This document shows, one piece after another, positions 17,028-57,238 of a stretch of 64,000 bases of DNA. The notes under the pieces were generated by a model. It had not been told where the DNA came from, ran no database searches, and was given only the letters and a program-made list of their open reading frames with translations. The position numbers were made by a program, and so were the translations under genes. How positions within the stretch are numbered: the first letter of the stretch is position 1; every line of letters begins with the position of its first letter. The stretch spans positions 159,016 through 223,015 of IMG/VR virus record IMGVR_UViG_3300021511_000003. The stretch is one strand, 5' to 3'.

Positions 17028-18194
17028 TTAATTATGTTCTAAGTTAAATACGGTTTTTAAGTAAGAAACGAACTGCTTATTTTCACACATACCTTTACCA
17101 GGGGAATTTGAAATTTTTGCTACAGGTTGACCATTACATTTGGTCATTTTGATTACCATATTGAGAGCAGGATTGGAAAAATTATTTGTTAGTTTTGTTC
17201 CGATACCAAAAGAAACTCCAATATGCATGTTAAGTGCATTGTAAATTTCTTTTGCTTTTTCAAAATCTAATCCATTGCTAAAAACAATGGTTTTTGTCAA
17301 CGGTTCAATTCCTCTATTTTTATAGAATTTAACCATACGAAAACCAAACTGAATAGGGTCAGGTTCGGAATCCTCACGAACACCATCAAATAGTTTATAC
17401 AATAATGGATCGTCAAAATCATGTAAGAAAGCATCTGTATTAATAACATCGGACAATGCTATTCCTAGATCGCCACGATATACTTTTATCCAATTTTCAA
17501 AAGCCATTTTTTGACTGAGATCTAATCTATATTCAAGTTGTTGATGTGCTTGCAACCATTCATGAGCCATAGTACCGATTGGTTTTACATTGTACTTCAT
17601 AGCCAATAATAAATTACTAGTGCCAATAAAATTATTGGTTGCATAGTTTTTACAATATTTTACAACTTTAGAATGCCATCTATAACTTCTTCTTCTTCTG
17701 GTACCAAAGTCTGCAAACTTCAATCCTTCTGGTAAATAATAAAGATTTTCACTCAGTCTCATCTCGGCATCTTTGTAATTGGATATACTAAGATTACAAA
17801 ATATTTCACTAATAATAGACATTAAAGGAACTTCAAAAAGAATAGTTTGAAACCAAGGTCCTTTGATATCAATATTCAGTTCACCAGTATTTGTATTAAT
17901 TGATGTTTTAACTAAATCTGTATTAAATTTATATTGTTTTAAAAACTCAATATATTCTTCACTAAAAAAACGGAGACTTCTTAAATAATCAAGTTCATCT
18001 CTATGAAAATATAGACTGCGTAAGGCATCAATATTAAGTTCAATATCTTGTATTGACTTTTTAAAATTTACACCTTCATAATTTCTACATTTGAATTTAT
18101 ATTCAACTGGAGTTGCTGCATAACCTAATTTTAATACTGCCTGTTGCATAGTAAATTTATACTGGTCATTATCAAGTAAACTATTCTGAATCAT
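17028..18194 (-). CDS. pncB: nicotinate phosphoribosyltransferase
   Basis: True start MIQNSLLDNDQYKFTMQQ; ADFGTRRR, GTSN, GTMAHE, FGIGTKL, KISNSPGK. Confidence 0.92.
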   Translation of the reverse strand: MIQNSLLDNDQYKFTMQQAVLKLGYAATPVEYKFKCRNYEGVNFKKSIQDIELNIDALRSLYFHRDELDYLRSLRFFSEEYIEFLKQYKFNTDLVKTSINTNTGELNIDIKGPWFQTILFEVPLMSIISEIFCNLSISNYKDAEMRLSENLYYLPEGLKFADFGTRRRRSYRWHSKVVKYCKNYATNNFIGTSNLLLAMKYNVKPIGTMAHEWLQAHQQLEYRLDLSQKMAFENWIKVYRGDLGIALSDVINTDAFLHDFDDPLLYKLFDGVREDSEPDPIQFGFRMVKFYKNRGIEPLTKTIVFSNGLDFEKAKEIYNALNMHIGVSFGIGTKLTNNFSNPALNMVIKMTKCNGQPVAKISNSPGKGMCENKQFVSYLKTVFNLEHN

Positions 18195-18566
18195 TGTTTC
18201 TCCTTTGTTATAGTTAAATAAGAAAATATAGAGAATGGATTCTATTCCGGTTCGCCAATTAGCCACCGGGGAAAATCCAGCTGGAAGCCTCAATCGTTTT
18301 GGGAGGCAACGGGTAAATATGTAGCTATTTTGTTAGTGTCACATAACGTTAGTTCATCTTGATATTCTGGTGGAACACCCCATATTAATTACTTAAAAAA
18401 TATAATAACTCTGCTTCATTAATTAATATATATAGATATAATTTTTAAAAATAAGAACATAAAAATGTAGGGTAGGTACAGACTATTTAAGTTTGTTTCC
18501 TTCCATTTATCTTAAACAATCAATTGGTTAAAAAAAATGTTTTGAGTAACAAAATAATAAAAGGAG

Positions 18567-19046
18567 ATGTTATTTATGGATAATGTTGTAATTGCTGCAC
18601 CTCATCCTGATGATGAAATAATTGGTTGTTATGAAGTATTAACAAATAGTATAAATCCAGTTATTATTTATTCAGATGAAACAGATGCAGATAGACGTGA
18701 AAAAGTATTGAAGTTGAAAGAACATGTTGATTGTAAATTACAATTATTTCAAATGTCAATTCCACAAACATTTATGAATAAAATAAATGTTTTTTATTTT
18801 CCAGATCCAATTTATGAAACTCATCCTTTACATAGACAATGGGGTATTATGGGTGAGACTATGGCAAGGAATGGATTTAATGTTATATTTTATTCAACAA
18901 ATATGGCATGTCCATATATTCATGAAGTAAAGTTTCCAGACAAAAAGGAAGAATTGTTAAATAAAGTGTATCCAGATCAAAAAACGTTGTGGCAGTATGA
19001 AAAGAAATATATTTTATTTGAAGGGTATAATAAGTGGTTGTTTTAA
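18567..19046 (+). CDS. PIG-L/LmbE-family deacetylase
   Basis: APHPDDEIIG and downstream HPLH metal-binding motifs. Confidence 0.8.
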   Translation: MLFMDNVVIAAPHPDDEIIGCYEVLTNSINPVIIYSDETDADRREKVLKLKEHVDCKLQLFQMSIPQTFMNKINVFYFPDPIYETHPLHRQWGIMGETMARNGFNVIFYSTNMACPYIHEVKFPDKKEELLNKVYPDQKTLWQYEKKYILFEGYNKWLF

Positions 19047-19276
19047 TTATGATTTATTAAAAATAATGGAGATATTTAAAATGAGCGCAGGCCCAATATT
19101 GATGAAGGAATTAAAGTTTAAAAAATATTATCATTTACGGTTAACAAAAAAAGATTGGTGTACATATTCAGGTAATTGCCCAACAGAAGAAAACCTTGTT
19201 GACGATTCTTATTGTTGGTTATGTAAGTATGCTAAAAAACTTGATTTACCGAAACTGTTATTAGAAAGGGGAATTT

Positions 19277-20233: not shown

Positions 20234-20744
20234 AATTTTTAATACTTGGCTCTTTGATGGGAGTAAAACGTCACCAATACCACCAGCAAGAGGAAAGGTT
20301 GATATATTAAAATATAATTCTCCAATAACACATACTTATATTCTTAGTTTATTTATGAGAAATAATAGTCTAAATAAATATTTAGATGAATATTTTAATA
20401 ATATTAACTTAAGATATATTCCAAAAGAAGAACTTTTTAAGTTTATAAAAAAATGTGTTCAAGATTTTAGAGTTAGACGTAATCAAACTGTATTTTATAA
20501 ATTCCAACGGCAGAATAAGCTGTATGGTATTTTAAGAGATAGATTCCCTCAATTAAAAAATAATGATGTTAGCCTTTTGTGTGAATTGATTGAAAAGTCA
20601 GAAGAAAAAGAAGCTATATATAATTCGCTTGGAATGGAGGTACCAAAGAAGAAAAAAATAAAGACGGGTGTAAAGAAGCCAAAAAAAGGAAAAATACCAT
20701 TGAAGTCCTTTTTGGCGGAGCACTTTTCCACTATTGCTATGTGA
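20217..20744 (+). CDS. hypothetical protein, possibly clamp-loader small subunit (gp62-like)
   Basis: Size and layout only. Confidence 0.35.
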   Translation: MESPYKIFNTWLFDGSKTSPIPPARGKVDILKYNSPITHTYILSLFMRNNSLNKYLDEYFNNINLRYIPKEELFKFIKKCVQDFRVRRNQTVFYKFQRQNKLYGILRDRFPQLKNNDVSLLCELIEKSEEKEAIYNSLGMEVPKKKKIKTGVKKPKKGKIPLKSFLAEHFSTIAM

Positions 20745-20762
20745 AAAAGTGCTCTATCAAAT

Positions 20763-43674: not shown

Positions 43675-44832
43675 TTATCCCTTTATATTTATTAGTGGTT
43701 TGGCATGATCAATTATATTTATAACTATTCCATTTTGTTTTTTGATTACTTCATAGACATTCTTATAAGCGTCAGGTGCTTCATCTATTGTTGACTGATC
43801 GACCTTAGCAACAATACCTTTCATTTGATTTTTGAAAAGTTTCATGTCAATTGTAGATTTGGCTTTCTTTCTACTCATCGTTCGTCCAGCACCATGTGAA
43901 GCTGAATTTAAGTATTTTTCATTACCTAAACCTTCTGTAACATATACACCAGTTTTCATATTACCAGGAATAATTCCAATTTGCCCTTTTTCAGCAGGTG
44001 TTGCACCTTTTCTGTGTAGAACATGCGTCCCTTTTACCTCTGCATGATTATGATTTTCATTAATCATATGATCATGGACTAAAATACTTATTTCGTGCTC
44101 ATTATAACCAAGCAGTAAAAGAATTTCACTTATCATTAATTTTCTATTATCAATAGCGTACTCAAGGGCAAAATTCATATCTTTGAGATATTGCTGCCCT
44201 GATTCACTATTGAGATGAAAGAAACCTTTTGGCAAATCAATATCAATTTTCTTTGAAAGTTTCATATAATAGCTGGCAATCGAATGACCAATATTTCTTG
44301 AACCAGAATGAACAGTTATAGTTAGGTAACCTTTATTATTTTCACCTATTTCAATGAAATGATTGCCGCCACCTAAAGTACCAAGTTGAACATTTAGTTT
44401 ATTATCAACTTTTTTCTGTAGTTCTTTATCTCTAGATGCGCTTTGAAAATCATAATAAACGTATCCATTTTTTCTAGAATTAAACCCAACAGGTATCGTT
44501 TTATAAATATGTTCAAAAAGTTTTATTTTTTCTGATTCTTGTTTAAAGAACTCTTTTGCTTTAATTTTTGTTGCAATATAACACATACCACAACCAATAT
44601 CATATCCTACATATTCAGGAGATATTACATTATCAAGTAATGCTACACCACCAATCGGTAATGTGTAACCTGTATGACAATCAGGCATTACCGCTAATTT
44701 GATTAAAAAGTCAAGTGCAAGGGCTTCATATATTTGTTGTTGTGCAGTCTGTTCTAATTCATGAATAGGAATTAAACTAAAGAGTTTTTCTAATTTTTTA
44801 ACAGGATTTAAATTTTCTGTGTTTTTAGACAT
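43675..44832 (-). CDS. rtcB: RtcB RNA ligase
   Basis: MPDCH, GYDIGCG, LGGGNHFIE, HSGSR, HNH, HRKGAT, HGAGR. Confidence 0.95.
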   Translation of the reverse strand: MSKNTENLNPVKKLEKLFSLIPIHELEQTAQQQIYEALALDFLIKLAVMPDCHTGYTLPIGGVALLDNVISPEYVGYDIGCGMCYIATKIKAKEFFKQESEKIKLFEHIYKTIPVGFNSRKNGYVYYDFQSASRDKELQKKVDNKLNVQLGTLGGGNHFIEIGENNKGYLTITVHSGSRNIGHSIASYYMKLSKKIDIDLPKGFFHLNSESGQQYLKDMNFALEYAIDNRKLMISEILLLLGYNEHEISILVHDHMINENHNHAEVKGTHVLHRKGATPAEKGQIGIIPGNMKTGVYVTEGLGNEKYLNSASHGAGRTMSRKKAKSTIDMKLFKNQMKGIVAKVDQSTIDEAPDAYKNVYEVIKKQNGIVINIIDHAKPLINIKG

Positions 44833-45769: not shown

Positions 45770-47449
45770 TCACCTCATTTTAATTTCATAAAGTTTGTTA
45801 CTTCTAAAGAATCTAACTTGATTTCCTTCTTTACAAAGTCTCATTGTTGAGTTGATAATAGGATCCTCAATTCGTTTGATATTATTTTTATCAAATTTAT
45901 TGAGAAATATTTCCACTGCATCAGTATCTGTAATTAATACACATACCCCATTATCAAGACATGTAAAATTAATTGGTGTATAATCTACATTCTCTTCTAT
46001 ACGACATTTATATTTATTATGTTTATTATCAAATATAATAATGAATCTGTTATATACACCACCTTTATGACCAGTTATAACACAAATCTTATTTTCATAT
46101 TTAGCATCCATGATTTGAAAGTCATTAAGTTCAGGAATAGATTTGATAATAAAATAACTTTTATCAAATGAGGGTAATGGTATTACCACATATTTTTTTC
46201 CAATAATACTCTGAATTATAACATTACTAAACATTTGACTTGAGTTAGGTTCTATATTCCATACAGTTTTAACAATGGGATGAATTTTTTCACCCATATG
46301 TTTGAATGTTAATTCTATCAGTTTCTCTTTATTTTTTAAAAATAGGACATTGTTGGTTATCATCAGGTCAGTACATTCAAGATCAATTTCTGGATTAATT
46401 CCGCCCATAGATTTAAATTTTACTCTTTTATTTTTAATTTTAACAAGAATAGGATGATTCCTTAAAGGAGTAAAAAGTATCTCAACACCAATAGGGAGTT
46501 CATAATCTGTTTTACCTAAATATAATCTCTCTTTTGTTTTAGTAATACCAAGAGATGCATTATGATAAAGAACATCCCCTAAAAATTCCTGTAACTCTAT
46601 GATTTCAAAATTATCAGTATTTTGAACAAGTTGAACAACAATCTGTGCAACTCCTGCTACACCAGGCATAGCAGGCGGTGGCTTTCGTAAACCATTTTCA
46701 AAAATATTATAGAACCAATCTTTATAAGATGCTGGAATTAAAGAAAAATCTCTGGTTGTTGGAGGTAAGGATACAGAACCATTGAAAACTGATACACAAT
46801 CAATAATTCTTTTTTTAAAATCATTCTTTTTATATCCTCTATGTTTTCCCTTAAATGGATGTATTCCGATAAATAATTGAAAAGCAATAATTCCAAATGA
46901 AAACCAATCTGATAATACTGTAAACTCTTTGGTTGTCCAATCTCTAATTGAAGGCATAATTGCTGTTGGTGGATATGATGGAGTTTTCCATGCATTTACA
47001 TCGATAAAATATGGGGTCACAAAGTCTTTTGAAACCATGTAATTCAGCTCATTATTATCAACTATCAAACATTTTTTATCATGAATAAATTGAGTAGTAT
47101 GTTTAATATTTTCAACCAATTCAATAATTTGATCGTTTTCAATTGCATTGTTATTTCGAAAAGTGTTTGTAAATAATTTGCATAAAGTAACAATATCTTC
47201 TCCTAACCAATTCATTGTAAAACCAATTTCGTGCTTTTTTTCATCGAATACTACATCCTGAGGTCTTACAATACTATCATGATTAAGTCTAGATAGTTCC
47301 CCAATTTTTGCAATAGGGATCATTTTTGTTAAATCATTATATATTTTGAAGGCTATGTTACCTTTTTTGTATATACTACCTTCGCCACCTTTGGTAACAT
47401 AATCATTTTGGACTAAATTCACCTTATGCCCATTTACATAGACAATCAT
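45770..47449 (-). CDS. atypical Ser/Thr kinase (TerY-P-type) with C-terminal extension
   Basis: GGEGSIY, AFKIY, DNNELN, FIDVN, DWFSFGIIAFQLFIGIHPFKG. Confidence 0.8.
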   Translation of the reverse strand: MIVYVNGHKVNLVQNDYVTKGGEGSIYKKGNIAFKIYNDLTKMIPIAKIGELSRLNHDSIVRPQDVVFDEKKHEIGFTMNWLGEDIVTLCKLFTNTFRNNNAIENDQIIELVENIKHTTQFIHDKKCLIVDNNELNYMVSKDFVTPYFIDVNAWKTPSYPPTAIMPSIRDWTTKEFTVLSDWFSFGIIAFQLFIGIHPFKGKHRGYKKNDFKKRIIDCVSVFNGSVSLPPTTRDFSLIPASYKDWFYNIFENGLRKPPPAMPGVAGVAQIVVQLVQNTDNFEIIELQEFLGDVLYHNASLGITKTKERLYLGKTDYELPIGVEILFTPLRNHPILVKIKNKRVKFKSMGGINPEIDLECTDLMITNNVLFLKNKEKLIELTFKHMGEKIHPIVKTVWNIEPNSSQMFSNVIIQSIIGKKYVVIPLPSFDKSYFIIKSIPELNDFQIMDAKYENKICVITGHKGGVYNRFIIIFDNKHNKYKCRIEENVDYTPINFTCLDNGVCVLITDTDAVEIFLNKFDKNNIKRIEDPIINSTMRLCKEGNQVRFFRSNKLYEIKMR

Positions 47450-47459: not shown

Positions 47460-47774
47460 TTATATATTAATTCCAGGAATTAAATTAAATACTTGTGGAT
47501 CAAAAACATCAAAGATATAACATTTTCTAAACGTGAGAGTATCTTCAATTGCATATGAATTAATTCCTAATTGATAATAAATTTTTCCGGTTATATTATC
47601 ACCATTAATCTCTTTTACTTCTACCCAGAAGTATTCACATTCATTTCTTATTTTAACATAATGTCCAACCTTAATATTATTGAAATAAACTGGGTTGATA
47701 GCTCGAGTGTTAGTCGGGCATAATTCTTTCATTATTTTTGGTTCTGTAAGATCAGTTGGATTATAGTGTGCCAT
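47460..47774 (-). CDS. hypothetical protein (DUF2314-like)
   Basis: YVKIRNECEYFWVEV. Confidence 0.5.
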   Translation of the reverse strand: MAHYNPTDLTEPKIMKELCPTNTRAINPVYFNNIKVGHYVKIRNECEYFWVEVKEINGDNITGKIYYQLGINSYAIEDTLTFRKCYIFDVFDPQVFNLIPGINI

Positions 47775-48580
47775 TAATCTATCCTCATATATGCTCCTAC
47801 TGAAAGATCATCGTAGTGAACGATATCATCTTTGGTAAATTGATTCAGAGCTTTTTTTAATCTTCGTTTAAGAAATTCCCCTTTGATGGTTTTAAATGCC
47901 ATTATACTGGATAAAACTTCAAAAATAGATATCATATCTTTTTCAGTTGGGGTCTTCTTTATAAAAGATTGAATACCATCTGAGCAAATTAAAAGAGACT
48001 GGTATTCTGACATTTGATAACGTCTAGTAATTTGTGCATCATATGCATATTCTTTTGAGATTGAAACTGTTTCACTCATTTGTGTTTTAAATATTTTTGA
48101 ATTTTTATTTATGTGATATATCTTATCTCGATCTTCATCAATGTAATATGTTAAATAATAAGGAGCATTTTTATCAAATTCAACAGAATTAAATTCTATA
48201 ATACCAGAATTATTTTTGCATATAATAGCACCATCTCCATACATAAATACATTGATAATCCCATCTAATTCAAATGAAATAATTAGGGTTGCATCAAGGC
48301 AGCTAATGGGCAAACCCAATTGTCTAGCTGTCAATTCAGCATTATGAATTATCCAACTTCCCATTTTATAATAATCAAGATTATGAAGATTACTCTGTCG
48401 ATATTTTAAATATTGTTTAGCCAGATGACAAAGTATTCCTGCACCCATTTCAGTATTATTAGATGAAGAACATCCATCAGATAAAATTAAGAAAGGAGTA
48501 GGGGTATTACCTTGAATTATATAGTCTTGACAAATTTTATGACTATCTCCTATCTTCAAAAATGTATCAGTATTTATCAT
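47774..48580 (-). CDS. PP2C-like protein phosphatase
   Basis: CQDY, SDGCSS, GDG, CSDG, DDLS. Confidence 0.85.
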   Translation of the reverse strand: MINTDTFLKIGDSHKICQDYIIQGNTPTPFLILSDGCSSSNNTEMGAGILCHLAKQYLKYRQSNLHNLDYYKMGSWIIHNAELTARQLGLPISCLDATLIISFELDGIINVFMYGDGAIICKNNSGIIEFNSVEFDKNAPYYLTYYIDEDRDKIYHINKNSKIFKTQMSETVSISKEYAYDAQITRRYQMSEYQSLLICSDGIQSFIKKTPTEKDMISIFEVLSSIMAFKTIKGEFLKRRLKKALNQFTKDDIVHYDDLSVGAYMRID

Positions 48581-48740: not shown

Positions 48741-49850
48741 TTAGGCAGCCACTCGGGCTGATTTTATATATGTTCGTTTTAGAATTGAAACTGAATGTTC
48801 ACCAACTGCTGGTTGAAATAATTTCAGTCGTTGCCATTTGATTCGTTTTCCTGGCATGACAAAATCCTCTTCCCATTTTACATTTTTGAACCAGGATGGC
48901 ATTCTTTCAGGATTTATATAGTGGGCGTATTCTGATGCTCTGGTCATAAAGCGCAGTTTGGAGTTAACTTTCATTAGTTCTTTTCTGTCTGTATATGCAG
49001 CTACAAGCCCTTTTTGTGTTTCGGGATATATATGATATGTACCGGATCTAAATGTGTCTGGTGTATAAACCATAGATTCAAATGCAACAAATTTCTTTTG
49101 AATTGAATCCCCATATGTATAGTTATGGGTTTCTGGTTTTTCACTTGTTGTTGGAAAGTCTATACCGGCAGCCTTAATACGTTTTATTTCCTTGTTCAAA
49201 AAGGCAGCCTGGTCTGTCAATCGGTCTTCCAACATTTTGGTAATAATATAATGATGACCGAAAAATGATGTCCATCGATTCGGGTGAATGAAATTTTTAA
49301 ATATGATTTTATTTCCAGACCATAGTTTGTTTTCTGTAATGAAACGATTTTCTCTTATGGTAGGATCGAATTGAATTGTTTCCCATCCTGAGTAAAATTT
49401 ACCATCCTTTCCGGTAATTGAAAATGTGCGAACATCACCAACTTTGTCTTCACCAATAATATTCTGATCTATTATATTGACATTGAAAGAAAAGAAAAAT
49501 TTATTGGCTCCAACACTGATAAGCTCCCCGTTACGATTAAATCTAGATTTTAATACCTGATCTTCACGTATTTTCGTTTGAGTGTGGGGTTTGTAAGTTG
49601 GAATGTTAATTATAGCACCACGACCGGCAAGCGAATATAGAAAACATGCTAAATCCAAATCTGTACCTTTAAATATTCCATAATCATCATATGCAGGACT
49701 GGGTTTCCTGGTAAAAAGGTCATAGTTCCACCATTCAATGACTTGATCACAAATTGGTTGAATTTCAGCGTTTCGGTTAAGGATTGATACAACAAGTGGA
49801 TTCGACAAAATAGTTTTAATACTTTGGGCAACATGCTTTGGTGCTGTCAT
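48741..49850 (-). CDS. hypothetical protein (369 aa)
   Basis: Long ORF, no motif recognised. Confidence 0.7.
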   Translation of the reverse strand: MTAPKHVAQSIKTILSNPLVVSILNRNAEIQPICDQVIEWWNYDLFTRKPSPAYDDYGIFKGTDLDLACFLYSLAGRGAIINIPTYKPHTQTKIREDQVLKSRFNRNGELISVGANKFFFSFNVNIIDQNIIGEDKVGDVRTFSITGKDGKFYSGWETIQFDPTIRENRFITENKLWSGNKIIFKNFIHPNRWTSFFGHHYIITKMLEDRLTDQAAFLNKEIKRIKAAGIDFPTTSEKPETHNYTYGDSIQKKFVAFESMVYTPDTFRSGTYHIYPETQKGLVAAYTDRKELMKVNSKLRFMTRASEYAHYINPERMPSWFKNVKWEEDFVMPGKRIKWQRLKLFQPAVGEHSVSILKRTYIKSARVAA

Positions 49851-49865
49851 ATATTTGTTCCTTTT

Positions 49866-50411
49866 TTATGGTTGCATATTAGCAACACGGTTAAGTTCAC
49901 GAACAACATTAGTTGCTTCTTCTGCACAAAATTCATCTGGTACTATCAATGATTTATATAAAACTTCTTTTTCATGAAAATAAAATTCCTGGGTAATAAT
50001 TAAACAATCTGGTAAACTTCCTCCTAACTCATAAATAATAGTTGCAGCTCTTTTATGGACTGTATTGTATGCTACTATATTTCCTTGAGAATAGATTGTA
50101 TTCTTACGATTAATCCACTTTATATCCTTTTTAAATGTTCCATCTTTAGGACGAAGTGTTGTAATCAATATATATTTATCTGTATTATTGTGTTTCCATA
50201 CATGATATTCTCGAATTGCTATAGACTTCTCTATATTAACACTTTTACTACCCAGGTATTTATATGTTGGAAATATTGCGATTTCATTATGATATAGTGG
50301 GCGAAAATAATTAATATCTTCAATAACATCAGTTTCTATTTTTTCTACTCCAACACAACCTATTGTTATTAATAAAGATATTAACAGAATAAATTTTAAA
50401 ATATTTTTCAT
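49866..50411 (-). CDS. putative lipoprotein
   Basis: Signal peptide ending LITIGC. Confidence 0.6.
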   Translation of the reverse strand: MKNILKFILLISLLITIGCVGVEKIETDVIEDINYFRPLYHNEIAIFPTYKYLGSKSVNIEKSIAIREYHVWKHNNTDKYILITTLRPKDGTFKKDIKWINRKNTIYSQGNIVAYNTVHKRAATIIYELGGSLPDCLIITQEFYFHEKEVLYKSLIVPDEFCAEEATNVVRELNRVANMQP

Positions 50412-50480: not shown

Positions 50481-51239
50481 TTAGAAGGTCAAGGTTTGGC
50501 TTGGTGCGCCAGTTCCAAGAGCTTGACTTTGGCTACTGATACTTTCACTTACAAAGTTGGCCAGCTTTGCCAGTTTGCCAGCTGTTGCATCTCCGATATC
50601 AATAAACTGCGTTAACCCGGCATCCTTGCAAAACCTTTCCAGTGAATCTATAACCTGTTGTTGTTTATTAACTTGTGGATCTTTCAAAGCAACCACAATG
50701 ATAACATTTGATTCGATTTCTTCATTCAACATGGCATCCGTATTTTTATCTTTGATTGATTTGGGTGTCATGGTAGATCGGTTATCCATTCCATCGGTAA
50801 TGATATAAATTGCACCATTACAATCAAAATCCTGATCAATCAACCGCTTAGAATATTCCAAGGTGGCACATACTGCATCATACGTAGCATCAAAGAGACT
50901 GGTCATACCATCGGGATACAAAGGAGAATAAGAATTTATGTCGATATCTCCAAGATTAATGAAACCATGAACTTCAATGATATTTTCGTTAAACAGTAAA
51001 ATACGAAGCAGTAGATTTTCTGACCGGGGGCTTTTCTGACATGCTTCAATTATGGATTTGATAGCATCCAGTAGATCATCGGCGAATCTGATTACGCTAC
51101 CGGAAATATCGCACACAATGGTCACCAGTGTATATTCGGTTGCACCCAATTCTTCAATTCTTATAGCAGAGAACTTGAATGAACCAGGTCCTTTAATATC
51201 AATTACTTGTGTATCATCTTTCCCCATCATTTTTGGCAT
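50481..51239 (-). CDS. vWA domain protein (TerY-like)
   Basis: MIDAS DISGS, DGMTSLFDA, IITDGMDNRS. Confidence 0.85.
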   Translation of the reverse strand: MPKMMGKDDTQVIDIKGPGSFKFSAIRIEELGATEYTLVTIVCDISGSVIRFADDLLDAIKSIIEACQKSPRSENLLLRILLFNENIIEVHGFINLGDIDINSYSPLYPDGMTSLFDATYDAVCATLEYSKRLIDQDFDCNGAIYIITDGMDNRSTMTPKSIKDKNTDAMLNEEIESNVIIVVALKDPQVNKQQQVIDSLERFCKDAGLTQFIDIGDATAGKLAKLANFVSESISSQSQALGTGAPSQTLTF

Positions 51240-51254
51240 TGTATATTACTCCTT

Positions 51255-51533
51255 TTAAAATGTTATATTATTGTCAATGATGTATCTCCCAATACGGCAC
51301 TCATAATCTGGACTGCTTTCAATTTGTGTGTGACTGTAACATGGGGTTTCTTTATACCACCATTTTGAATGAATACTACATGAATATTCTCCAGGTTTTG
51401 AACCTCTTAAATGTTTACAAGGACCATTCCCTTCATGTATGTCTATATTGTTTTCACTTATGGGTTTTTCTGGATCATCAACAATTACAACTATATATTT
51501 ATGACAGCAATACCCACAACGAAGACATATCAT
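51255..51533 (-). CDS. CxxCxxCC (YkgJ-like) Cys-cluster protein
   Basis: CLRCGYCC...CKHL...CSIH. Confidence 0.7.
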   Translation of the reverse strand: MICLRCGYCCHKYIVVIVDDPEKPISENNIDIHEGNGPCKHLRGSKPGEYSCSIHSKWWYKETPCYSHTQIESSPDYECRIGRYIIDNNITF

Positions 51534-52354
51534 AATAAATATTCTTTAGTTGTACTGACTTGCATTCCTCTTGCTTGCATATCCGCAACAAACTTATTAC
51601 CAATGTCCGAAAATAGTGTGGTGCCGGGAGGATCAGCTACATCAGATGTGGCATCTGTAAGGAGTACCATCTTTTTGATACTTTCCTTGCCAAATTCATC
51701 GGCAATGTCGATAACTGTATTTGCCAAACAATGTGATCTGGCTTCACCGGCAAGTAGGATAACATCTGCTTTTTCAAGGGTGTCAATCAACTTCATATTG
51801 ATATTTGTATCAGGATCTGATGTGTCAACCACGTCAGCCTTAACGGCAGAGTAATGTTCAGTTCGATAATTGGACCCCTTAGTTACATAATCAATGATAC
51901 CAAATTGTTCCTCCCATTCAAGAAATGCATCAAATAGAGGAGCATCAGGCTTTTCATTTATAACAGAACCACCCCAGCTACCGATAAGACAATGTGGAGG
52001 CCAAATACAAAGCGGATAACGTTGGTTATCTTCTAGAGCCTGAACATAATCCTGAACACGCTTCTGAAACTGTGGGTTTGTAGAACGATATAATCCTTGT
52101 TTTACATCTGATACACTGATGACTGTAAATGGGTCGGGATGTTTGCCGGCGGAATTGATCCAGAAAATCGGGTGGGCGATGTCAACAAAATGATGACTGT
52201 CGAGGGTAACATGAATATCATCAATCTTTTTTTTAAGTCGTATTATCATTGCTGCTAATCGTGCCATATCTTCGGTTGCTCCGGGAACATACAAAGAACC
52301 ATTTGGATGACAAAAATCATTCTGTGGGTCAACAACTAATAATTCAATTTGCAT
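51530..52354 (-). CDS. nicotinamidase/isochorismatase-family cysteine hydrolase (PncA-like)
   Basis: VVDPQNDF, LDSH, WPPHC, VTKG, GEARSHC catalytic triad D/K/C. Confidence 0.85.
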   Translation of the reverse strand: MQIELLVVDPQNDFCHPNGSLYVPGATEDMARLAAMIIRLKKKIDDIHVTLDSHHFVDIAHPIFWINSAGKHPDPFTVISVSDVKQGLYRSTNPQFQKRVQDYVQALEDNQRYPLCIWPPHCLIGSWGGSVINEKPDAPLFDAFLEWEEQFGIIDYVTKGSNYRTEHYSAVKADVVDTSDPDTNINMKLIDTLEKADVILLAGEARSHCLANTVIDIADEFGKESIKKMVLLTDATSDVADPPGTTLFSDIGNKFVADMQARGMQVSTTKEYLL

Positions 52355-52413: not shown

Positions 52414-52797
52414 TTATCTGGTTAGTAAATCTGCTTCTTTATTGAAACCACGTTTTACATGTTCAAGTTTCCACTCAGTAAAATAATGTTTTAATTTATA
52501 TCTTACTTGATTGCAAAGTATTAATAGTTTTGAATCTTTAACTTTCCATTTACCGTTTACTTGATTTACCACAAGAGCTGAATCTCCAAATATTTCAATA
52601 CTTTTGATATCAGCTTTTATAGCTTCATCCAATAATCTTTTCAATGACAAATATTCAGACTGATTATTTGTACCATAATCTAACTCTTCTGAATACTTAA
52701 TAATAACGGTATTGGATTTGTCTTTTATAACTCCTCCTATTGTCATAATACCAGGATTGGGTTTAGAAGAACCATCAAAAAATCCTTTAAATTTCAT
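52414..52797 (-). CDS. rnhA: ribonuclease HI
   Basis: FDGSS, TNNQSEY, GDSALVVNQV, NKEADLL. Confidence 0.9.
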   Translation of the reverse strand: MKFKGFFDGSSKPNPGIMTIGGVIKDKSNTVIIKYSEELDYGTNNQSEYLSLKRLLDEAIKADIKSIEIFGDSALVVNQVNGKWKVKDSKLLILCNQVRYKLKHYFTEWKLEHVKRGFNKEADLLTR

Positions 52798-53461: not shown

Positions 53462-55267
53462 CTACTCCTTTTTATTATTACGTGATAGACCTAAACTCAA
53501 ATTACTGGCACCAAGAATGGCTGCTGCACCCTCAAGACCACCTGCCTGACCCATAACAAATGTAGTCGGGAATTTGATCATATTGGGATGTGACGATGCT
53601 GCCGCAAGAACTTCTTTTACATATGCAAGTTCAAATGCCTTATCTTGGCCAAGCACGAGAGCCTGAGCTTTCTGTCCAGAGGCAACTGCTTTCAAATAAT
53701 TTTCTTCACCTATACCCTCTTTCTTACGGGCGGCTGCATTATTATCTGCAATAGTAATACCGATTTGGGATTTCATCAAACGACCTTGTTCATCGGCACG
53801 TGCTCGCTCTTTTTCAGTTTCAACACGTTCGCTCTGTGCGATCTTTTCCTGTTTATACGTAGCCATTAAAGATTCGGCAAGTTGTTTTCTTTTACCAGGA
53901 ATCAGAAGTGACGGCGGAACAGCAGGATCTCCAAAACGTACCCATTGAACAGTAAGACCAGCTTGGGCGCCGGCAGGTATTAACTTACGTGCAACTTCTT
54001 TTTCCAGTTCTTCTCTATGATAAAGAAGGTCAAGAACTTCACGGGGGCGAGTAATTTTCTGCATCTTGGGTTCACCCTTTGAATCGGGAATTTCATTACC
54101 ATCTTTGTCAATTGCAAGATTATACACTGGCTCACCTTCTTTATCAAGGACAGGTTCTTCAACAGTGACAACCTGTGATACAACATTCCGCAGGATTGAA
54201 CGATAATTGGGAGTAATGATTTTGTTTTCAACAGCTTCTAGACTCCCAACAGATGCAACAACAAACGGTGCATTCTCAGGTGTAACCTGAACTTGGACTC
54301 TGGAATCCTGAAATACATCCCATCCTTGAACACGAAGAACAATTGCCATATCGGCGGCATTTTCTGGAGTTATAATTTTTTCTTCATGAGGAGATTGAAC
54401 AATCTTTCCATCATCCCCAATTGTCAAATCAATCCATTTTCGAGTATACCCACCAATATATTTCCAGGTTTGAACTCTGGTATCAACGATTGTAACATCA
54501 TAGGCTTTCTCATTGAGATAATATTCACCTGCATTATATACATCATTCCAAACACCACGATAACCTTTAGGTACTATGGGAACAGACAGGTCAGTTTGTG
54601 TAATACCAGTTGGTAGAATTGGTGGTCCTTTATAATCTTCACCAACATTCGATTTAATAACAGCAACATGACCAGCTGGAACAGGAGTTGATGATCCCTC
54701 ATATGCTTCAAATAGATAACGATTTATTCTGTATTCACCAGGAGGTAATATGGTCAACTGCGGACCTTTGATACCTTTGGGGACACCATCTTTATTATCA
54801 TATCCCATAAATATCATTGCGTTAATCATACTACTTAAATCATCCCATTCCGAAGCAATGAATTGACCTTTTGGCATGGGATTTCCATCTTTGGCAACAA
54901 GTAGACCATATTTGCCTTGTTCAACTCTAAGTATTGGTAATTCTTCAATATCATGTGTAACCCGTATGAAAGGAATTAAATGAAAACCAGGAGCTAGAAT
55001 TTTTGCCTGGGGTCCTTTTTCATTTATATTAGCAATAATTCGCCCAGACGGCATCTGATTTCCGAAATAAATACGTTTGAGATGACCAACACTGTTCGAA
55101 TCAATAATAAGGCAACTGGTTGCCAAAAACGCTGTAAATGCAATACCAATTGCTGAACCACGAATCGTCAAACGAATCCACTTATTATTACTATCCCTAT
55201 CTGGAAACAAGTGAGGCACAGTAAAAGCTACAATAATACATATAACGATTAGAAACAAAAGTACCAT
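53462..55267 (-). CDS. SPFH/band-7 (flotillin-like) membrane protein
   Basis: Two N-terminal TMs, GPQAKILAPGFH, repeated PG/GEY modules, coiled-coil C-terminus. Confidence 0.8.
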   Translation of the reverse strand: MVLLFLIVICIIVAFTVPHLFPDRDSNNKWIRLTIRGSAIGIAFTAFLATSCLIIDSNSVGHLKRIYFGNQMPSGRIIANINEKGPQAKILAPGFHLIPFIRVTHDIEELPILRVEQGKYGLLVAKDGNPMPKGQFIASEWDDLSSMINAMIFMGYDNKDGVPKGIKGPQLTILPPGEYRINRYLFEAYEGSSTPVPAGHVAVIKSNVGEDYKGPPILPTGITQTDLSVPIVPKGYRGVWNDVYNAGEYYLNEKAYDVTIVDTRVQTWKYIGGYTRKWIDLTIGDDGKIVQSPHEEKIITPENAADMAIVLRVQGWDVFQDSRVQVQVTPENAPFVVASVGSLEAVENKIITPNYRSILRNVVSQVVTVEEPVLDKEGEPVYNLAIDKDGNEIPDSKGEPKMQKITRPREVLDLLYHREELEKEVARKLIPAGAQAGLTVQWVRFGDPAVPPSLLIPGKRKQLAESLMATYKQEKIAQSERVETEKERARADEQGRLMKSQIGITIADNNAAARKKEGIGEENYLKAVASGQKAQALVLGQDKAFELAYVKEVLAAASSHPNMIKFPTTFVMGQAGGLEGAAAILGASNLSLGLSRNNKKE

Positions 55268-55356
55268 TTTTTTAAATCTCCTTTTTTAAAATATAAATAG
55301 ATCGACATTAATAACACAAACGTTTATAAAGACACCTCCTTTCATATAGTAATTTA

Positions 55357-56109
55357 TTATTTGCATTTCATATCATTATAACCGCATCCTTCTATTCTAT
55401 GAACTTCTTTATGACAATCTTTACATAAAGTAATTACTTTATCAAGATCAGCACTTTCAAGAGGTTCCCATCTAATTCCTTCTATATGATGACAATGTAA
55501 CCCAACCTCCAACTTATCTTGATGTTTATTACATCTTTGACAAGTATAATTATCAAGTTCAAATCTCATTTGACGAAGTTCAGGTTGAACTTCTCTGGAT
55601 GTAGCTGGTTTATACTCTTTAGGATAATATTGTTGATTATATATTGAGCATTCTGTTTTACATTTCTCCGAGCAGTAAAATCTATGTTCTCCAAAGCCAA
55701 TGGAATTTATAGATCTTATTCTGTCAATAACGGTATGCAACTTTGGTATAAACCATTTACCACAATAAACACATCTAACCTCTAGTATATTTTGATCGTT
55801 TATACATCTTCGACATTTTTCAATAAACGATAATTGTGGGTTGTATGTATCATATTTTGGGATATTAATTTTATTATACCCTCCTTTCCAGTTATTATTA
55901 CCAGAACTCATCTGTGTTTTTTTCATTTTATTACTCATTATTTCTTTAGTTTTCAAAGAACGTTTTTTTCCAAGGTTTTTACCTTTTGTATTTTTACTGT
56001 TTATTTTTTTCATAGCTGGGCAAGAGTTATGACTTTTACTACAACACCATTTACCATTTTTTAACTGATAAATTGCTTTTTGATTGCAACCGTAATTACA
56101 TAATGGCAT
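55357..56109 (-). CDS. HNH endonuclease, paralog of 38949..39821
   Basis: Near-identical C-terminal HNH domain. Confidence 0.82.
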   Translation of the reverse strand: MPLCNYGCNQKAIYQLKNGKWCCSKSHNSCPAMKKINSKNTKGKNLGKKRSLKTKEIMSNKMKKTQMSSGNNNWKGGYNKINIPKYDTYNPQLSFIEKCRRCINDQNILEVRCVYCGKWFIPKLHTVIDRIRSINSIGFGEHRFYCSEKCKTECSIYNQQYYPKEYKPATSREVQPELRQMRFELDNYTCQRCNKHQDKLEVGLHCHHIEGIRWEPLESADLDKVITLCKDCHKEVHRIEGCGYNDMKCK

Positions 56110-56120
56110 ATTGCAATCCT

Positions 56121-56786
56121 TTATCTTTTATCTGGTAACCACATCCACCATCTATCTCCGAAACCTGGTGCACTGAGAGCATACCACTTTGTAGTATCCA
56201 GTAATGTCCCTTTATTATAAGTGTGCCAATGACCGAAAAACCATAAATCAGGTTTGTACATATCCCATAATGAAGATAGAGCTTGATTTGATGGTTCGTG
56301 TGTTTTTTCTGGATAAAATTTAATCAATTGTGGTACTAACTCACTTGGGCACGTATGAGTTATAAATATATCGATCTTGACATCTGGGAGATCTACTAAA
56401 TCTGCTTGTGTAATAATTTCTTCGGGAAACCAAGTAATACCAATAGTTCTCATATGTTGATCAATTGACCAAGCACCCCCCATAAACATTATGGTTCGAC
56501 CATCAGGTAATGTATAAATTGAACCTCTTGGCATATAAATAATTCCGGGTTCCAGTTCATCACTTTCTCTATTCTTTAACGACCAATGATCTTCATGATT
56601 TCCATCACACCATAATAATTTTTCTGCCCCTTGAAGTTTTATAGATGAAAGCGGAACACTCCAGCTTACCTTTGGCCAATATCCAAAGTCACCACAACAT
56701 ATAATAAGTTCTGGTTTCCTTCGGTTTATAAGTTCATTTAATTGACTAAAATTATTATGAACATCACCTGTTATTAGAACTTTCAT
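56121..56786 (-). CDS. calcineurin-like metallophosphoesterase
   Basis: GDVH, CGDFG, DGNHE, THTCP, FGHWH. Confidence 0.88.
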   Translation of the reverse strand: MKVLITGDVHNNFSQLNELINRRKPELIICCGDFGYWPKVSWSVPLSSIKLQGAEKLLWCDGNHEDHWSLKNRESDELEPGIIYMPRGSIYTLPDGRTIMFMGGAWSIDQHMRTIGITWFPEEIITQADLVDLPDVKIDIFITHTCPSELVPQLIKFYPEKTHEPSNQALSSLWDMYKPDLWFFGHWHTYNKGTLLDTTKWYALSAPGFGDRWWMWLPDKR

Positions 56787-57238
56787 AATAGACTCCTTAT
56801 TGTCATTAAAAGTTTACCCAACTGATTTTGACCAATTATTTTTTTACATTTTTTACATTTACAATCACCCCAATAATTATCATGCCAATAGTTTCCTTCT
56901 ATAAGTTTAGCATCCCCAGTTGATAAAATAAATTCTTTAAATTGATTTTGACTGAACTTTTGAAGTAAAAAATTTTTCATTCTTGCTATTTTAATAAGAT
57001 CCCAATCCTTTCTTAAATAAATTTTTCTTCCCATTAGTTTTGCTTTTCCAGCTTGGCCAGATTTAAGTTTGGAAATTTTATACCAGAATTCAGGCTTAAT
57101 ACTTTTACTGGCAACGAAGGCATGTTCAACAGTTGGGAAGTTGATATTATTGAATTTTATAATAACGGGATAAAAATTACTAAGTTGTTCATATTCATTC
57201 GCAAATCTATCAATTACTTTTAATTCTTGCATTATCAA
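56783..57238 (-). CDS. NADAR (YbiA-like) ADP-ribose N-glycosidase
   Basis: LSNFY, PTVEHAF, LIEGNYWHDNYWG, GQNQLGKLLM. Confidence 0.88.
   Translation of the reverse strand: MIMQELKVIDRFANEYEQLSNFYPVIIKFNNINFPTVEHAFVASKSIKPEFWYKISKLKSGQAGKAKLMGRKIYLRKDWDLIKIARMKNFLLQKFSQNQFKEFILSTGDAKLIEGNYWHDNYWGDCKCKKCKKIIGQNQLGKLLMTIRSLL

What the first reader, a model, noticed from the sequence alone, without database searches (positions are those of the whole stretch)
17028..57238. PncA-like + PncB + NADAR: possible Preiss-Handler-type NAD+ reconstitution against NADase defences
Seen: PncB (17028), a nicotinamidase-like hydrolase (51530) and NADAR (56783) in one phage. Known: Thoeris/SIR2/TIR defences split NAD+ into nicotinamide + ADPR; the described phage counter-pathways are NARP1 (ADPR-PP route) and NARP2 (Nampt + Nmnat); NADAR removes ADP-ribose from DNA (DarT1 antitoxin activity). 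Inference: Nam -> NA (PncA) -> NaMN (PncB) would be a third, deamidated route, needing host or phage NadD/NadE.
Basis: partly seen in the sequence, partly recalled or inferred. Interest (0 to 1): 0.62.

Follow-up and report, generated by a model that had tools for sequence, protein, structure and literature searches.

The report
Phage nicotinamide salvage genes with kinase switch
This large marine-sediment phage really does carry a divergent nicotinamidase and a nicotinate phosphoribosyltransferase (the first two steps of Preiss-Handler NAD+ salvage), but the nicotinamidase's constant partner is an undescribed vWA / PP2C phosphatase / protein-kinase trio, and the NADAR gene is most likely a separate DNA de-ADP-ribosylase.

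Summary
All three genes exist at the stated coordinates. PncB scores above NCBIfam equivalog cut-offs. NADAR passes Pfam and keeps the Glu/Lys pair. The "PncA-like" protein fails the Pfam and NCBIfam cut-offs. It does keep the nicotinamidase Asp-Lys-Cys triad and the Asp/His/His metal site, invariant in 40 homologues, and its AF2 model (pLDDT 91) matches nicotinamidases first.

New here: in 82 viral loci this nicotinamidase is followed by a vWA/MIDAS protein (75), a PP2C phosphatase (72) and a Ser/Thr kinase fused to a beta-propeller (70). In 37 of the 82, PncB, NadD-like or NadE genes lie within 10 kb, often interleaved (PncA-vWA-PncB-NadE-PP2C-NadD-kinase). The same operon, often headed by an NrtR-like regulator, sits in bacterial chromosomes.

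The window's 223-kb record (about 71% complete) has no NadD, NadE, Nampt, Prs or PnuC. So only Nam -> NA -> NaMN is phage-encoded here, and the last two steps need the host or the missing DNA.

Preiss-Handler genes in jumbo phages were already reported (Li 2024). An anti-defence role is untested. NARP3 is already taken, so this would not be "the third route". Verdict: partly supported; a new variant of a known kind.

The parts
17028..18194 (-). pncB, nicotinate phosphoribosyltransferase (388 aa from the ATG at 18194; the mechanical ORF runs to the TTG at 18293). It appears to be monocistronic, lying directly upstream of a tRNA array on the same strand.
   Evidence: Pfam NAPRTase + NAPRTase_N. 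NCBIfam NF003704 476 bits > 379 and TIGR01514 389 bits > 269.55. Start and Shine-Dalgarno. GTMAHE His211 is invariant in 21 phage and bacterial PncBs.
51530..52354 (-). Divergent nicotinamidase (PncA/Pnc1-like, 274 aa). Triad D9-K159-C209; metal ligands D52, H54, H121 (plus invariant H55, D58, H61). About 60 aa longer than yeast Pnc1.
   Evidence: There are 6845 homologues in the metagenomic protein set.
51255..51533 (-). 92-aa ORF inserted between the nicotinamidase and the vWA gene. It has a weak CxxCxxCC zinc/iron-chelating match and is absent at this place in most relatives.
   Evidence: E 0.0049, below cut-off; relatives have the two genes abutting.
50481..51239 (-). vWA-domain protein (252 aa) with a complete MIDAS motif (D44-x-S-x-S48 ... 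T113 ... D149). It has a conserved Ser/Gln-rich C-terminal tail (FVSxSISSQSQ...), a candidate phospho-acceptor.
   Evidence: Alignments. ESM Atlas: features score 0.97 to VWA clusters, structure TM 0.70-0.89. Found downstream of the nicotinamidase in 75 of 82 viral loci.
48741..50411 (-). Two ORFs of unknown function (49866-50411, 181 aa; 48741-49850, 369 aa) that interrupt the module in this phage only.
   Evidence: No Pfam or PHROG match. Not in the conserved clusters.
47774..48580 (-). PP2C-type protein phosphatase (268 aa).
   Evidence: Pfam PP2C_2 54.4 bits > 24. Present in 72 of 82 viral loci.
45770..47449 (-). Ser/Thr protein kinase (residues 1-255) fused to a C-terminal beta-propeller (about 280-559).
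   Evidence: Pfam Pkinase 27.2 bits (below GA 31.7). Kinase motifs are invariant in 50 homologues. AF2 pLDDT 92.9. Foldseek matches: LRRK2 kinase-WD40, CDKs, Nup133 propeller. Present in 70 of 82 viral loci.
56783..57238 (-). NADAR-family protein (about 149 aa from the ATG at 57232) with an E38/K45 pair. Probably an independent ADP-ribosyl-glycohydrolase of the AdfN/DarG1 type.
   Evidence: paper read.
56121..56786 (-). Calcineurin-like metallophosphoesterase (221 aa), overlapping the NADAR stop by 4 nt. The NADAR-then-phosphoesterase pair recurs in at least two relatives (L077, L078).
   Evidence: Pfam Metallophos 61.2 bits; phrog_1649.

Best explanation
The phage encodes the first two enzymes of the deamidating (Preiss-Handler) salvage of nicotinamide. 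A divergent metal-dependent nicotinamidase (51530-52354) turns nicotinamide into nicotinate. PncB (17028-18194) turns nicotinate plus PRPP, using ATP, into NaMN. NaMN must then be adenylylated and amidated by NadD and NadE. These come either from the host or from the roughly 29% of the genome that is not held.

The nicotinamidase is not a free-standing gene. It heads a conserved module with a vWA/MIDAS protein, a PP2C phosphatase and a Ser/Thr kinase-beta-propeller. The module is shared by about a hundred large phages and by bacterial chromosomes. It frequently has PncB, NadD-like, NadE and an NrtR-like (ADP-ribose-responsive) regulator woven into it.

My reading is that the trio is a phosphorylation switch or sensor gating this salvage branch. 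The vWA protein's conserved Ser-rich tail is the likely phospho-target. The benefit to the phage would be faster recycling of nicotinamide released by NAD+ cleavage, whether by NADase defences or otherwise, back into NAD+. NADAR and its metallophosphoesterase neighbour form a separate unit that most likely removes ADP-ribose from guanine in DNA (anti-DarT1).

Shown: gene identities, conserved catalytic residues, folds, and gene linkage. Inferred: enzyme activities, the regulatory role of the trio, and any counter-defence effect.
For: Nicotinamidase identity:
- phmmer alignment to yeast Pnc1 places D9, D52, H54, H121, K159 and C209 on Pnc1's catalytic and Zn residues.
- All six are invariant in 40 homologues.
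- AF2 pLDDT is 91.4, and the top ten Foldseek PDB hits are nicotinamidases.

PncB: above both NCBIfam cut-offs.

Linkage in 82 viral loci:
- vWA 75, PP2C 72, kinase 70, all on the same strand.
- PncB 26, NadE (NH3 type) 12-22, NadE (Gln type, NF002730 839 bits) 13, NadD-like 11, NrtR-like 7-8.
- 37 of 82 loci have at least one of PncB, NadD or NadE within 10 kb.
- The NAD genes sit at different positions inside the module in different loci. Examples are L032/L067 (PncA-vWA-PncB-NadE-PP2C-NadD-kinase) and L013 (PncA-vWA-PP2C-NadE-PncB-kinase). This argues for selection on proximity rather than inherited synteny.
- The seven loci that lack the trio still mostly carry PncB or NadE.

Whole records of at least 90% completeness: NAPRTase family in 11 of 14 and NadE in 10 of 14.

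Cellular copies: 374 loci. Among the best 80, vWA is in 60, NrtR-like in 33 and PncB in 12. In a complete 6.18-Mb Capsulimonadaceae chromosome the operon PncA-vWA-PP2C-kinase-PncB is flanked by ordinary cellular genes.

Folds of the trio.

The held record has no NadD, NadE, second NAPRTase-family gene, Prs or PnuC.

NADAR: E38/K45 have the same spacing as AdfN E36/K43 (paper).
Against: - No enzyme activity, expression or infection phenotype is known. No RNA run holds the locus.
- The nicotinamidase fails the Pfam and NCBIfam family cut-offs, so another amide substrate is possible.
- In this phage PncB is 33 kb from the nicotinamidase, and NadD and NadE are missing from the held DNA.
- Some near-complete relatives carry the nicotinamidase module with no NAPRTase or NadE at all (G012 at 97%, G029 at 100%). 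The module therefore has a function that does not require phage PncB.
- A nicotinamidase alone would relieve nicotinamide inhibition of sirtuin-type NADases, which would not help the phage.
- The interaction test between nicotinamidase and vWA gave no answer.
- The trio's regulatory role is inferred only from gene linkage and from the published hypothesis for TerY-P triads (PMC11090510).
Confidence: 0.6

Rival explanations
1. This is housekeeping metabolic augmentation, not counter-defence. As in the published 'NAD-jumbo phages' and KVP40-type salvage, the genes simply raise the NAD+ supply for a large phage's own replication in a nutrient-poor sediment host, independent of any NADase immunity.
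For: Li et al. 2024 (PMC11662467) interpret phage Preiss-Handler and salvage sets this way. The same operon is a normal chromosomal operon in bacteria, with an NrtR-type metabolic regulator. No anti-defence gene is tightly linked to it.
Against: The held record has no NAD-dependent ligase and no other recognised large NAD+ consumer was found. All experimentally tested phage NAD+ pathways (NARP1-3) turned out to counter NAD+-depleting defences. Nicotinamide, the substrate, is exactly what NADase defences release.
Confidence: 0.3
2. The conserved four-gene unit is a TerY-P-like conflict or signalling system in which the nicotinamidase is the effector. It would work by destroying nicotinamide, for example starving rival phages' Nam-dependent NARP1/NARP2, or by superinfection exclusion. 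On this reading PncB and NadE are secondary additions.
For: The vWA + PP2C + kinase architecture matches the TerY-P triad, versions of which act as stand-alone antiphage systems (PMC11090510). Some complete genomes have the module without PncB or NadE. Weak PADLOC hits of the kinase are to defence kinases.
Against: No PADLOC TerY-P model matches any of the three proteins. The kinase carries a beta-propeller, not the Zn-ribbon or OB fold of TerY-P. Linkage to PncB, NadD, NadE and NrtR is far above chance, which fits flux into NAD+.
Confidence: 0.1
3. The PncA-like protein is an isochorismatase-superfamily amidase for a different substrate (for example NMN or NR deamidation, or another pyridine or heterocyclic carboxamide), so Nam -> NA does not occur.
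For: It scores below family cut-offs. It is about 60 residues longer than Pnc1, with extra invariant residues (H55, D58, H61). Foldseek also finds carbamoylsarcosine, maleamate and biuret amidases at lower rank.
Against: The DxH...H metal site plus the WPxHC motif and the D-K-C triad are all present and invariant; by recalled knowledge this combination is specific to nicotinamidases. The ten best structural matches are all nicotinamidases. The genomic partners are PncB, NadD and NadE, which need nicotinate.
Confidence: 0.1

Closest known systems
Preiss-Handler gene sets of 'NAD-jumbo phages' (Li et al. 2024, Microbiome, PMC11662467)
   Same: Both are large phages encoding pncB, with nadD and nadE in relatives. 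Both concern phage-borne NAD+ synthesis from nicotinate or nicotinamide, and both show clustering of the NAD genes.
   Different: That work does not describe this nicotinamidase family or its vWA-PP2C-kinase partners; pncA is mentioned only in passing. The window's phage has only PncA + PncB in the held DNA, so it would not meet their 'complete pathway' definition.
NARP1, NARP2 and NARP3 phage NAD+ reconstitution pathways (bioRxiv 10.1101/2024.02.11.579819; PMC13464706)
   Same: All are phage-encoded enzymes that rebuild NAD+ from its breakdown or precursor molecules. Nicotinamide is the input, as in NARP1 and NARP2.
   Different: The chemistry differs: a deamidated route through nicotinate, NaMN and NaAD. 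It needs four enzymes, two of them absent here. The held record has no Adps/Prs, Nampt/Namat, NadR or PnuC homologue. No experimental evidence of counter-defence exists.
Bacterial and yeast nicotinamidases PncA / Pnc1 (PDB 2h0r, 2wta, 3pl1)
   Same: Same fold, same Asp-Lys-Cys triad and same Asp/His/His metal site.
   Different: Only 17-22% identity. Length is 274 aa against about 180-216 aa, with extra segments. It falls below the Pfam and NCBIfam cut-offs and has an obligate operon context with signalling proteins.
TerY-P triad (vWA TerY + PP2C + Ser/Thr kinase; Anantharaman et al. 2012 as summarised in PMC11090510)
   Same: Three-gene architecture: a MIDAS-bearing vWA protein, a PP2C phosphatase and a protein kinase, found as a mobile cassette attached to other systems.
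   Different: There is no profile match to PADLOC TerY-P models. The kinase C-terminus is a beta-propeller rather than a zinc ribbon or OB fold. It is attached to NAD+ salvage genes rather than to tellurite-resistance or restriction genes.
AdfN / DarG1-type NADAR (bioRxiv 10.1101/2024.07.11.602962)
   Same: NADAR domain with the Glu...Lys catalytic pair, carried as an orphan gene in a phage.
   Different: By sequence it is closest to the YbiA branch. Activity on ADP-ribosyl-guanine has not been tested. It is paired with a metallophosphoesterase.

Membership tests
Nicotinamidase (PncA/Pnc1, isochorismatase-like superfamily) | Catalytic triad Asp-Lys-Cys | tested here: met
   D9, K159 and C209 align with Pnc1 D8, K122 and C167 (Pnc1 residue roles from memory). 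They are invariant in 40 homologues.
Nicotinamidase (PncA/Pnc1, isochorismatase-like superfamily) | Metal site Asp/His/His (DxH ... WPxHC) | tested here: met
   D52, H54 and H121 (in IWPPHC) align with Pnc1 D51, H53 and H94. They are invariant.
Nicotinamidase (PncA/Pnc1, isochorismatase-like superfamily) | Fold most similar to solved nicotinamidases | tested here: met
   The Foldseek PDB top 10 are all nicotinamidases, E 1.3e-14 to 8.4e-11, TM (by target) 0.51-0.82. Model pLDDT is 91.4.
Nicotinamidase (PncA/Pnc1, isochorismatase-like superfamily) | Scores above curated family cut-offs | tested here: not met
   Pfam PF00857 20.3 bits < 27. NCBIfam NF008623 21.7 bits < 174.
Nicotinamidase (PncA/Pnc1, isochorismatase-like superfamily) | Deamidates nicotinamide to nicotinate | not testable with these tools
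   Needs an enzyme assay.
Nicotinate phosphoribosyltransferase PncB | Both NAPRTase domains and equivalog-level score | tested here: met
   PF17767 + PF04095. NF003704 476 bits > 379 and TIGR01514 389 bits > 269.55.
Nicotinate phosphoribosyltransferase PncB | Conserved histidine of the GTxAHE motif (site of ATP-driven phosphorylation; role recalled from memory) | tested here: met
   The sequence reads IGTMAHEW. H211 is invariant in 21 sequences.
Complete phage Preiss-Handler pathway ('NAD-jumbo phage' sense) | NadD present | tested here: not met
   The only CTP_transf_like gene in the 223-kb record is an RfaE-domain-II heptose-1-P adenylyltransferase. tblastn with a relative's NadD-like protein was negative. 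The record is about 71% complete.
Complete phage Preiss-Handler pathway ('NAD-jumbo phage' sense) | NadE present | tested here: not met
   No PF02540 match. tblastn with four relatives' NadE proteins was negative.
NARP1 / NARP2 / NARP3 | Adps (Prs-like) + Namat; Nampt + Nmnat; PnuC + NadR | tested here: not met
   No Pribosyltran_N match. The single NAPRTase-family gene is PncB. No PnuC. No NMNAT-type cytidylyltransferase.
TerY-P triad | vWA protein with intact MIDAS motif | tested here: met
   D44, S48, T113 and D149 are invariant in 56 sequences. The Atlas assigns VWA clusters.
TerY-P triad | PP2C phosphatase and Ser/Thr kinase in the same operon | tested here: met
   PP2C_2 54.4 bits. Kinase fold and motifs. 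Co-occurrence in 70-72 of 82 loci.
TerY-P triad | Kinase fused to a C-terminal zinc ribbon or OB fold; homology to TerY-P models | tested here: not met
   The C-terminus is a beta-propeller. No PADLOC TerY-P hit at E <= 0.01 for any of the three proteins.
NADAR (AdfN/DarG1-type ADP-ribosylglycohydrolase) | NADAR domain above the family cut-off, with the Glu/Lys catalytic pair | tested here: met
   PF08719 80.1 bits > 35.1. TVEHAFVASK gives E38/K45, the same 7-residue spacing as AdfN E36/K43.
NADAR (AdfN/DarG1-type ADP-ribosylglycohydrolase) | Removes ADP-ribose from guanine in DNA / rescues from DarT1 | not testable with these tools
   Needs a DarT1 neutralisation or dot-blot assay.

The most novel reading that the evidence does not exclude
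The nicotinamidase-vWA-PP2C-kinase(beta-propeller) module, with its frequently interleaved PncB, NadD, NadE and NrtR genes, is a previously unrecognised signal-gated NAD+ reconstitution system shared by bacteria and large phages. On this reading, a phosphorylation switch senses NAD+ breakdown and turns on the deamidating salvage of nicotinamide. In phages it would act as a fourth kind of NAD+ reconstitution pathway that defeats NADase immunity (Thoeris, DSR, SIR2-HerA).
Probability: 0.25. Interest if true: 0.8.

Novelty: new variant of a known kind. Interest (0 to 1): 0.55.

Why it matters
NAD+ depletion is one of the commonest bacterial antiphage strategies. Every phage NAD+ pathway tested so far has proved to be a counter-defence.

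A deamidating route would use the nicotinamide that NADases release, but through chemistry that NARP-directed host countermeasures may not block. An example of such a countermeasure is aRES, which makes ADPR-1''-phosphate.

The near-obligate coupling of a metabolic amidase to a vWA/PP2C/kinase trio, in both phages and bacterial chromosomes, points to post-translational control of NAD+ salvage. I found no description of this in the searched literature. It also gives the enigmatic TerY-P-like triads a concrete, assayable metabolic partner.

Finally, it flags a large nicotinamidase family (thousands of metagenomic members) that current Pfam and NCBIfam thresholds miss.

Tried and rejected
- Nucleotide search of the phage collection with both regions found nothing. 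Only protein-level relatives exist, in uncultured huge phages LR756511, LR745208 and LR756500.
- The CTP_transf_like gene just upstream of the window (C1:154317-154694) was considered as NadD and rejected. It is an RfaE domain II heptose-1-P adenylyltransferase.
- A faint Pribosyl_synth hit on the 252-aa protein (E 0.088) suggested a Prs/Adps-like enzyme. This was rejected: it is a vWA/MIDAS protein.
- A profile search of that protein against PDB sequences gave no hit.
- PADLOC gave no TerY-P match.
- Complex prediction on nicotinamidase + vWA returned 'no answer' (score 0.00). This is no evidence either way.
- The aRES-countering phage phosphatase was checked as an analogue of the metallophosphoesterase next to NADAR and rejected. 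That phosphatase appears to be a Macro-domain protein, judging from the paper's outline only, and the record has no Macro domain.
- An amber-suppressor-like tRNA suggested TAG recoding. No sign of it was found.
- Rfam found no NAD+ riboswitch, only tRNAs and a tmRNA.
- The Anantharaman 2012 TerY-P paper could not be read. Its content is cited second-hand from PMC11090510.
- Read laying was not used. All holders are contig-only DNA runs and cannot show expression.

Full report
**Source of the window.** The window is the last 64 kb of a 223,015-bp linear IMG/VR virus record (CheckV about 71% complete, GC 30%). Near-identical DNA occurs in marine-sediment and hydrothermal-vent metagenomes from nine studies. 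None of these is an RNA run. There is no nucleotide-level relative in the phage collection. Protein-level relatives lie in uncultured huge phages of 460-600 kb.

**Observation: the three genes.**
- **PncB.** The ORF is 17028-18293 (-), and the likely start is the ATG at 18194 behind an AAAGGAG site. It carries both NAPRTase domains. It scores above two NCBIfam cut-offs: NF003704 at 476 bits against 379, and TIGR01514 at 389 bits against 269.55. The GTMAHE histidine is invariant in 21 PncBs.
- **NADAR.** The gene is 56783-57238 (-). It passes Pfam (80.1 bits against 35.1) and TIGR02464 (77.7 bits against 73.7). Its best solved relative is E. coli YbiA. Its TVEHAFVASK segment supplies a Glu38/Lys45 pair with the same spacing as the catalytic E36/K43 of the T4 anti-DarT factor AdfN.
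- **'Nicotinamidase-like hydrolase'.** The gene is 51530-52354 (-), 274 aa. It is the weak point by profile: Pfam Isochorismatase 20.3 bits (below GA 27, N-terminus only) and NCBIfam PncA 21.7 bits against 174.

**Is the 274-aa protein a nicotinamidase?**
- phmmer against all PDB sequences finds yeast Pnc1 first (E 1.7e-6).
- In that alignment D9, D52/H54, H121 (in IWPPHC), K159 and C209 fall on Pnc1 D8, D51/H53, H94, K122 and C167. These are the Asp-Lys-Cys triad and the zinc ligands (Pnc1 residue roles recalled from the literature).
- All six are invariant in an alignment of 40 homologues at 49-76% identity, together with H55, D58 and H61.
- An AlphaFold2 model (pLDDT 91.4, pTM 0.89) has nicotinamidases from yeast, Acinetobacter, Pyrococcus, Leishmania, Drosophila and M. 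tuberculosis as its ten best Foldseek PDB matches. Other isochorismatase-superfamily amidases rank below them.
- The family is large: 6845 hits in the metagenomic protein set.

I therefore accept it as a divergent nicotinamidase that curated thresholds miss. Its activity remains unassayed.

**The unexpected context.**
- I fetched 82 viral loci encoding this family and clustered their ORFs.
- Almost all flanking genes vary, but three follow the nicotinamidase on the same strand. These are a ~250-aa protein (75 of 82), a ~280-aa protein (72 of 82) and a ~560-aa protein (70 of 82).
- **The ~250-aa protein** (window 50481-51239) is a vWA domain with a complete MIDAS motif: D44-x-S-x-S48, T113 and D149, invariant in 56 sequences. 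The ESM Atlas places it among VWA clusters by features (0.97) and by structure (TM 0.70-0.89). It also has a strongly conserved Ser/Gln-rich C-terminal tail.
- **The ~280-aa protein** (47774-48580) is a PP2C phosphatase (PP2C_2, 54 bits).
- **The ~560-aa protein** (45770-47449) has invariant kinase motifs. Its AF2 model (pLDDT 92.9) is a protein-kinase domain followed by a beta-propeller, matching LRRK2 kinase-WD40, CDKs and Nup133.
- In the window the order is preserved, but four extra small ORFs of unknown function are inserted.
- The architecture is that of the TerY-P triad (vWA + PP2C + kinase). That triad is hypothesised to be a metal-sensing phosphorylation switch and is known in some forms as a stand-alone antiphage system (PMC11090510).
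- Two features differ from TerY-P. None of the three proteins matches PADLOC's models. The kinase tail is a propeller rather than a zinc ribbon or OB fold.

**Link to NAD+ synthesis.**
- Other recurrent neighbours are PncB (26 of 82) and ammonia-type NadE (12 by clustering, 22 by BLAST).
- Glutamine-type NadE is in 13 loci (NF002730, 839 bits) and a 203-aa NadD-like protein in 11 (all top NCBIfam hits are NadD; TIGR00482 95 bits, below its 112 cut-off).
- An NrtR-like Nudix + winged-helix protein is in 7-8 loci.
- Thirty-seven of the 82 loci have at least one of PncB, NadD-like or NadE within 10 kb.
- These genes are inserted at different points of the module. L032, L033 and L067 read PncA-vWA-PncB-NadE-PP2C-NadD-kinase. 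L013 reads PncA-vWA-PP2C-NadE-PncB-DUF5662-kinase. L010 reads PP2C-kinase-PncA-vWA-NadE.
- The seven loci without the trio still mostly carry PncB or NadE.
- Among whole records that are at least 90% complete, 11 of 14 have a NAPRTase-family gene and 10 of 14 have NadE.
- For scale, PncB relatives occur in about 529 of 2.9 million IMG/VR contigs.
- Seen from the PncB side, its commonest phage neighbour is NadE (28 of 49 non-boundary loci). The nicotinamidase is present in 9 of those 49.
- So the published pncB-nadE(-nadD) cluster is the base, and the nicotinamidase + trio is an extension found in a subset.

**Not phage-only.**
- A scan of species-representative genomes found 374 loci. Among the best 80, vWA is present in 60, the kinase in 41, PP2C in 39, an NrtR-like gene (usually immediately upstream) in 33, and PncB in 12.
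- Many are MAG contigs that could be mis-binned phages. Four, however, are complete Capsulimonadaceae chromosomes.
- In one of these (L095, 6.18 Mb) the operon PncA-vWA-PP2C-kinase-PncB is flanked by an ABC transporter, a BlaR1-type peptidase, a flavin reductase and an ECF sigma factor.
- The module is thus a cellular NAD-salvage operon variant that large phages also carry. The direction of transfer is undetermined.

**What this phage has and lacks.**
- The held 223 kb has one NAPRTase-family gene, which is PncB.
- It has no NAD synthase. Its only cytidylyltransferase-fold gene is an RfaE-type heptose-1-P adenylyltransferase.
- It has no Prs/Adps, no PnuC, no Macro domain and no NAD-dependent ligase. 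It has one unlinked Nudix gene.
- tblastn with relatives' NadE, NadD-like, NrtR-like and CoaD proteins is negative.
- The closest PncB relatives (L242 at 72% identity, L168 at 63%) have NadE beside PncB. In the window a tRNA array occupies that side.
- Hence only Nam -> NA -> NaMN is phage-encoded in the DNA at hand. NadD and NadE, which as recalled are near-universal in bacteria, must come from the host or from the missing ~29%.

**NADAR.**
- It lies 4.4 kb from the nicotinamidase, and its stop is overlapped by the start of a calcineurin-like metallophosphoesterase gene. That pair recurs in L077 and L078.
- A NADAR is within 10 kb of the nicotinamidase in only 11-12 of 82 loci.
- All phage NADARs tested experimentally remove ADP-ribose from guanine in DNA and counter DarTG1.
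- I therefore treat it as an independent function, not a step in NAD+ rebuilding.

**Mechanism proposed.**
- **Shown:** gene identities, conserved catalytic residues, folds and linkage.
- **Inferred:** the nicotinamidase hydrolyses nicotinamide to nicotinate. PncB converts nicotinate, using PRPP and ATP, to NaMN. NadD and NadE finish the synthesis.
- **Role of the trio:** the vWA/PP2C/kinase trio acts as a phosphorylation switch or sensor on this branch, with the vWA Ser-rich tail as the candidate phospho-acceptor and the propeller as a candidate sensor or docking domain.
- **NrtR link:** where an NrtR-like repressor is present, ADP-ribose, the other product of NAD+ cleavage, would plausibly induce the operon. 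This is NrtR's recalled behaviour in bacteria, not shown here.
- **Purpose:** the benefit may be counter-defence or plain NAD+ supply, and this cannot be decided here.
- **What argues against PncB dependence:** some near-complete relatives (G012, G029) carry the module without any NAPRTase or NadE. The module must therefore also work with host enzymes, or do something else.

**Comparison with the literature.**
- Li et al. 2024 (PMC11662467) already reported jumbo phages with complete salvage or Preiss-Handler gene sets, including pncB-nadD-nadE clusters. They mention phage pncA only in passing.
- NARP1 and NARP2 are described in bioRxiv 10.1101/2024.02.11.579819, which does not mention nicotinate, PncA or PncB.
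- NARP3, made of PnuC + NadR, is described in PMC13464706.
- Full-text searches found no paper linking a nicotinamidase to vWA/PP2C/kinase genes. They also found none testing a Preiss-Handler route as counter-defence. The library is incomplete, and the original TerY-P paper could not be read.

**Verdict.** The ordinary part, phage pncB and Preiss-Handler genes, is known. The new part is a large, threshold-evading nicotinamidase family locked to a TerY-P-like signalling trio and woven together with PncB, NadD, NadE and NrtR in both phages and bacteria. I rate it a new variant of a known kind, with interest 0.55.

Noticed in passing
window 2564-17013 (- strand): A dense array of 20 tRNA genes plus a tmRNA (8070-8455, tag peptide ADDYYTDFAKAA) lies directly downstream of pncB on the same strand.
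   Followed up: partly
window 9047-9118 (-): One tRNA has anticodon CTA (ARAGORN labels it 'Pyl'), making it an amber-suppressor candidate. A stop-codon test on the whole 223-kb record shows no sign of TAG recoding. Coding cover is 88.5% under code 11 against 90.6% with TAG as sense, and the longest ORFs are unchanged.
   Followed up: yes
window 43675-44832 (-); L063:1430-2494, L084:5093-5914, L053:1183-2346: RNA and DNA repair genes recur around the nicotinamide module. RtcB lies 1 kb from the kinase in the window. Relatives carry an RNA ligase (9 loci), a Thg1-like tRNA-His guanylyltransferase (6) and an ATP-dependent DNA ligase (7).
   Followed up: partly
window 52414-52797 (-) and 55357-56109 (-): An RNase H-like protein (RVT_3, 64.5 bits) sits immediately upstream of the nicotinamidase. 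An HNH/zinc-ribbon protein, possibly a homing endonuclease, lies between the metallophosphoesterase and a 601-aa protein.
   Followed up: no
G000:C1:152817-156194 (L002), just upstream of the window: A cupin protein, an RfaE-domain-II heptose-1-phosphate adenylyltransferase, a HAD-like phosphatase fragment, a GH108 muramidase with a PG-binding domain, and a staphylococcal-nuclease-like gene. Together these form a possible heptose-nucleotide sugar module next to the lysis enzyme.
   Followed up: no
L095:6286-9288 (-), Capsulimonadaceae chromosome: A 1000-aa protein with a WGR domain and an ATP-dependent DNA-ligase domain is encoded divergently, immediately upstream of the chromosomal PncA-vWA-PP2C-kinase-PncB operon. 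As recalled, WGR domains also occur in PARPs, so a link to ADP-ribosylation or DNA-break sensing is conceivable.
   Followed up: no
L013:14967-15440; L067:13681-14094: DUF5662 and DUF3307 proteins are inserted among the NAD genes of the module in several relatives (DUF3307 in 6 loci). Their functions are unknown, and they are possible further pathway components.
   Followed up: no
L216-L247 (IMG/VR proviruses): About 31 of the best 80 viral PncB hits lie exactly at the edge of short provirus records, with the match ending ~24 nt from the contig end. These look like host pncB genes captured at provirus boundaries, so they inflate counts of 'phage PncB'.
   Followed up: partly
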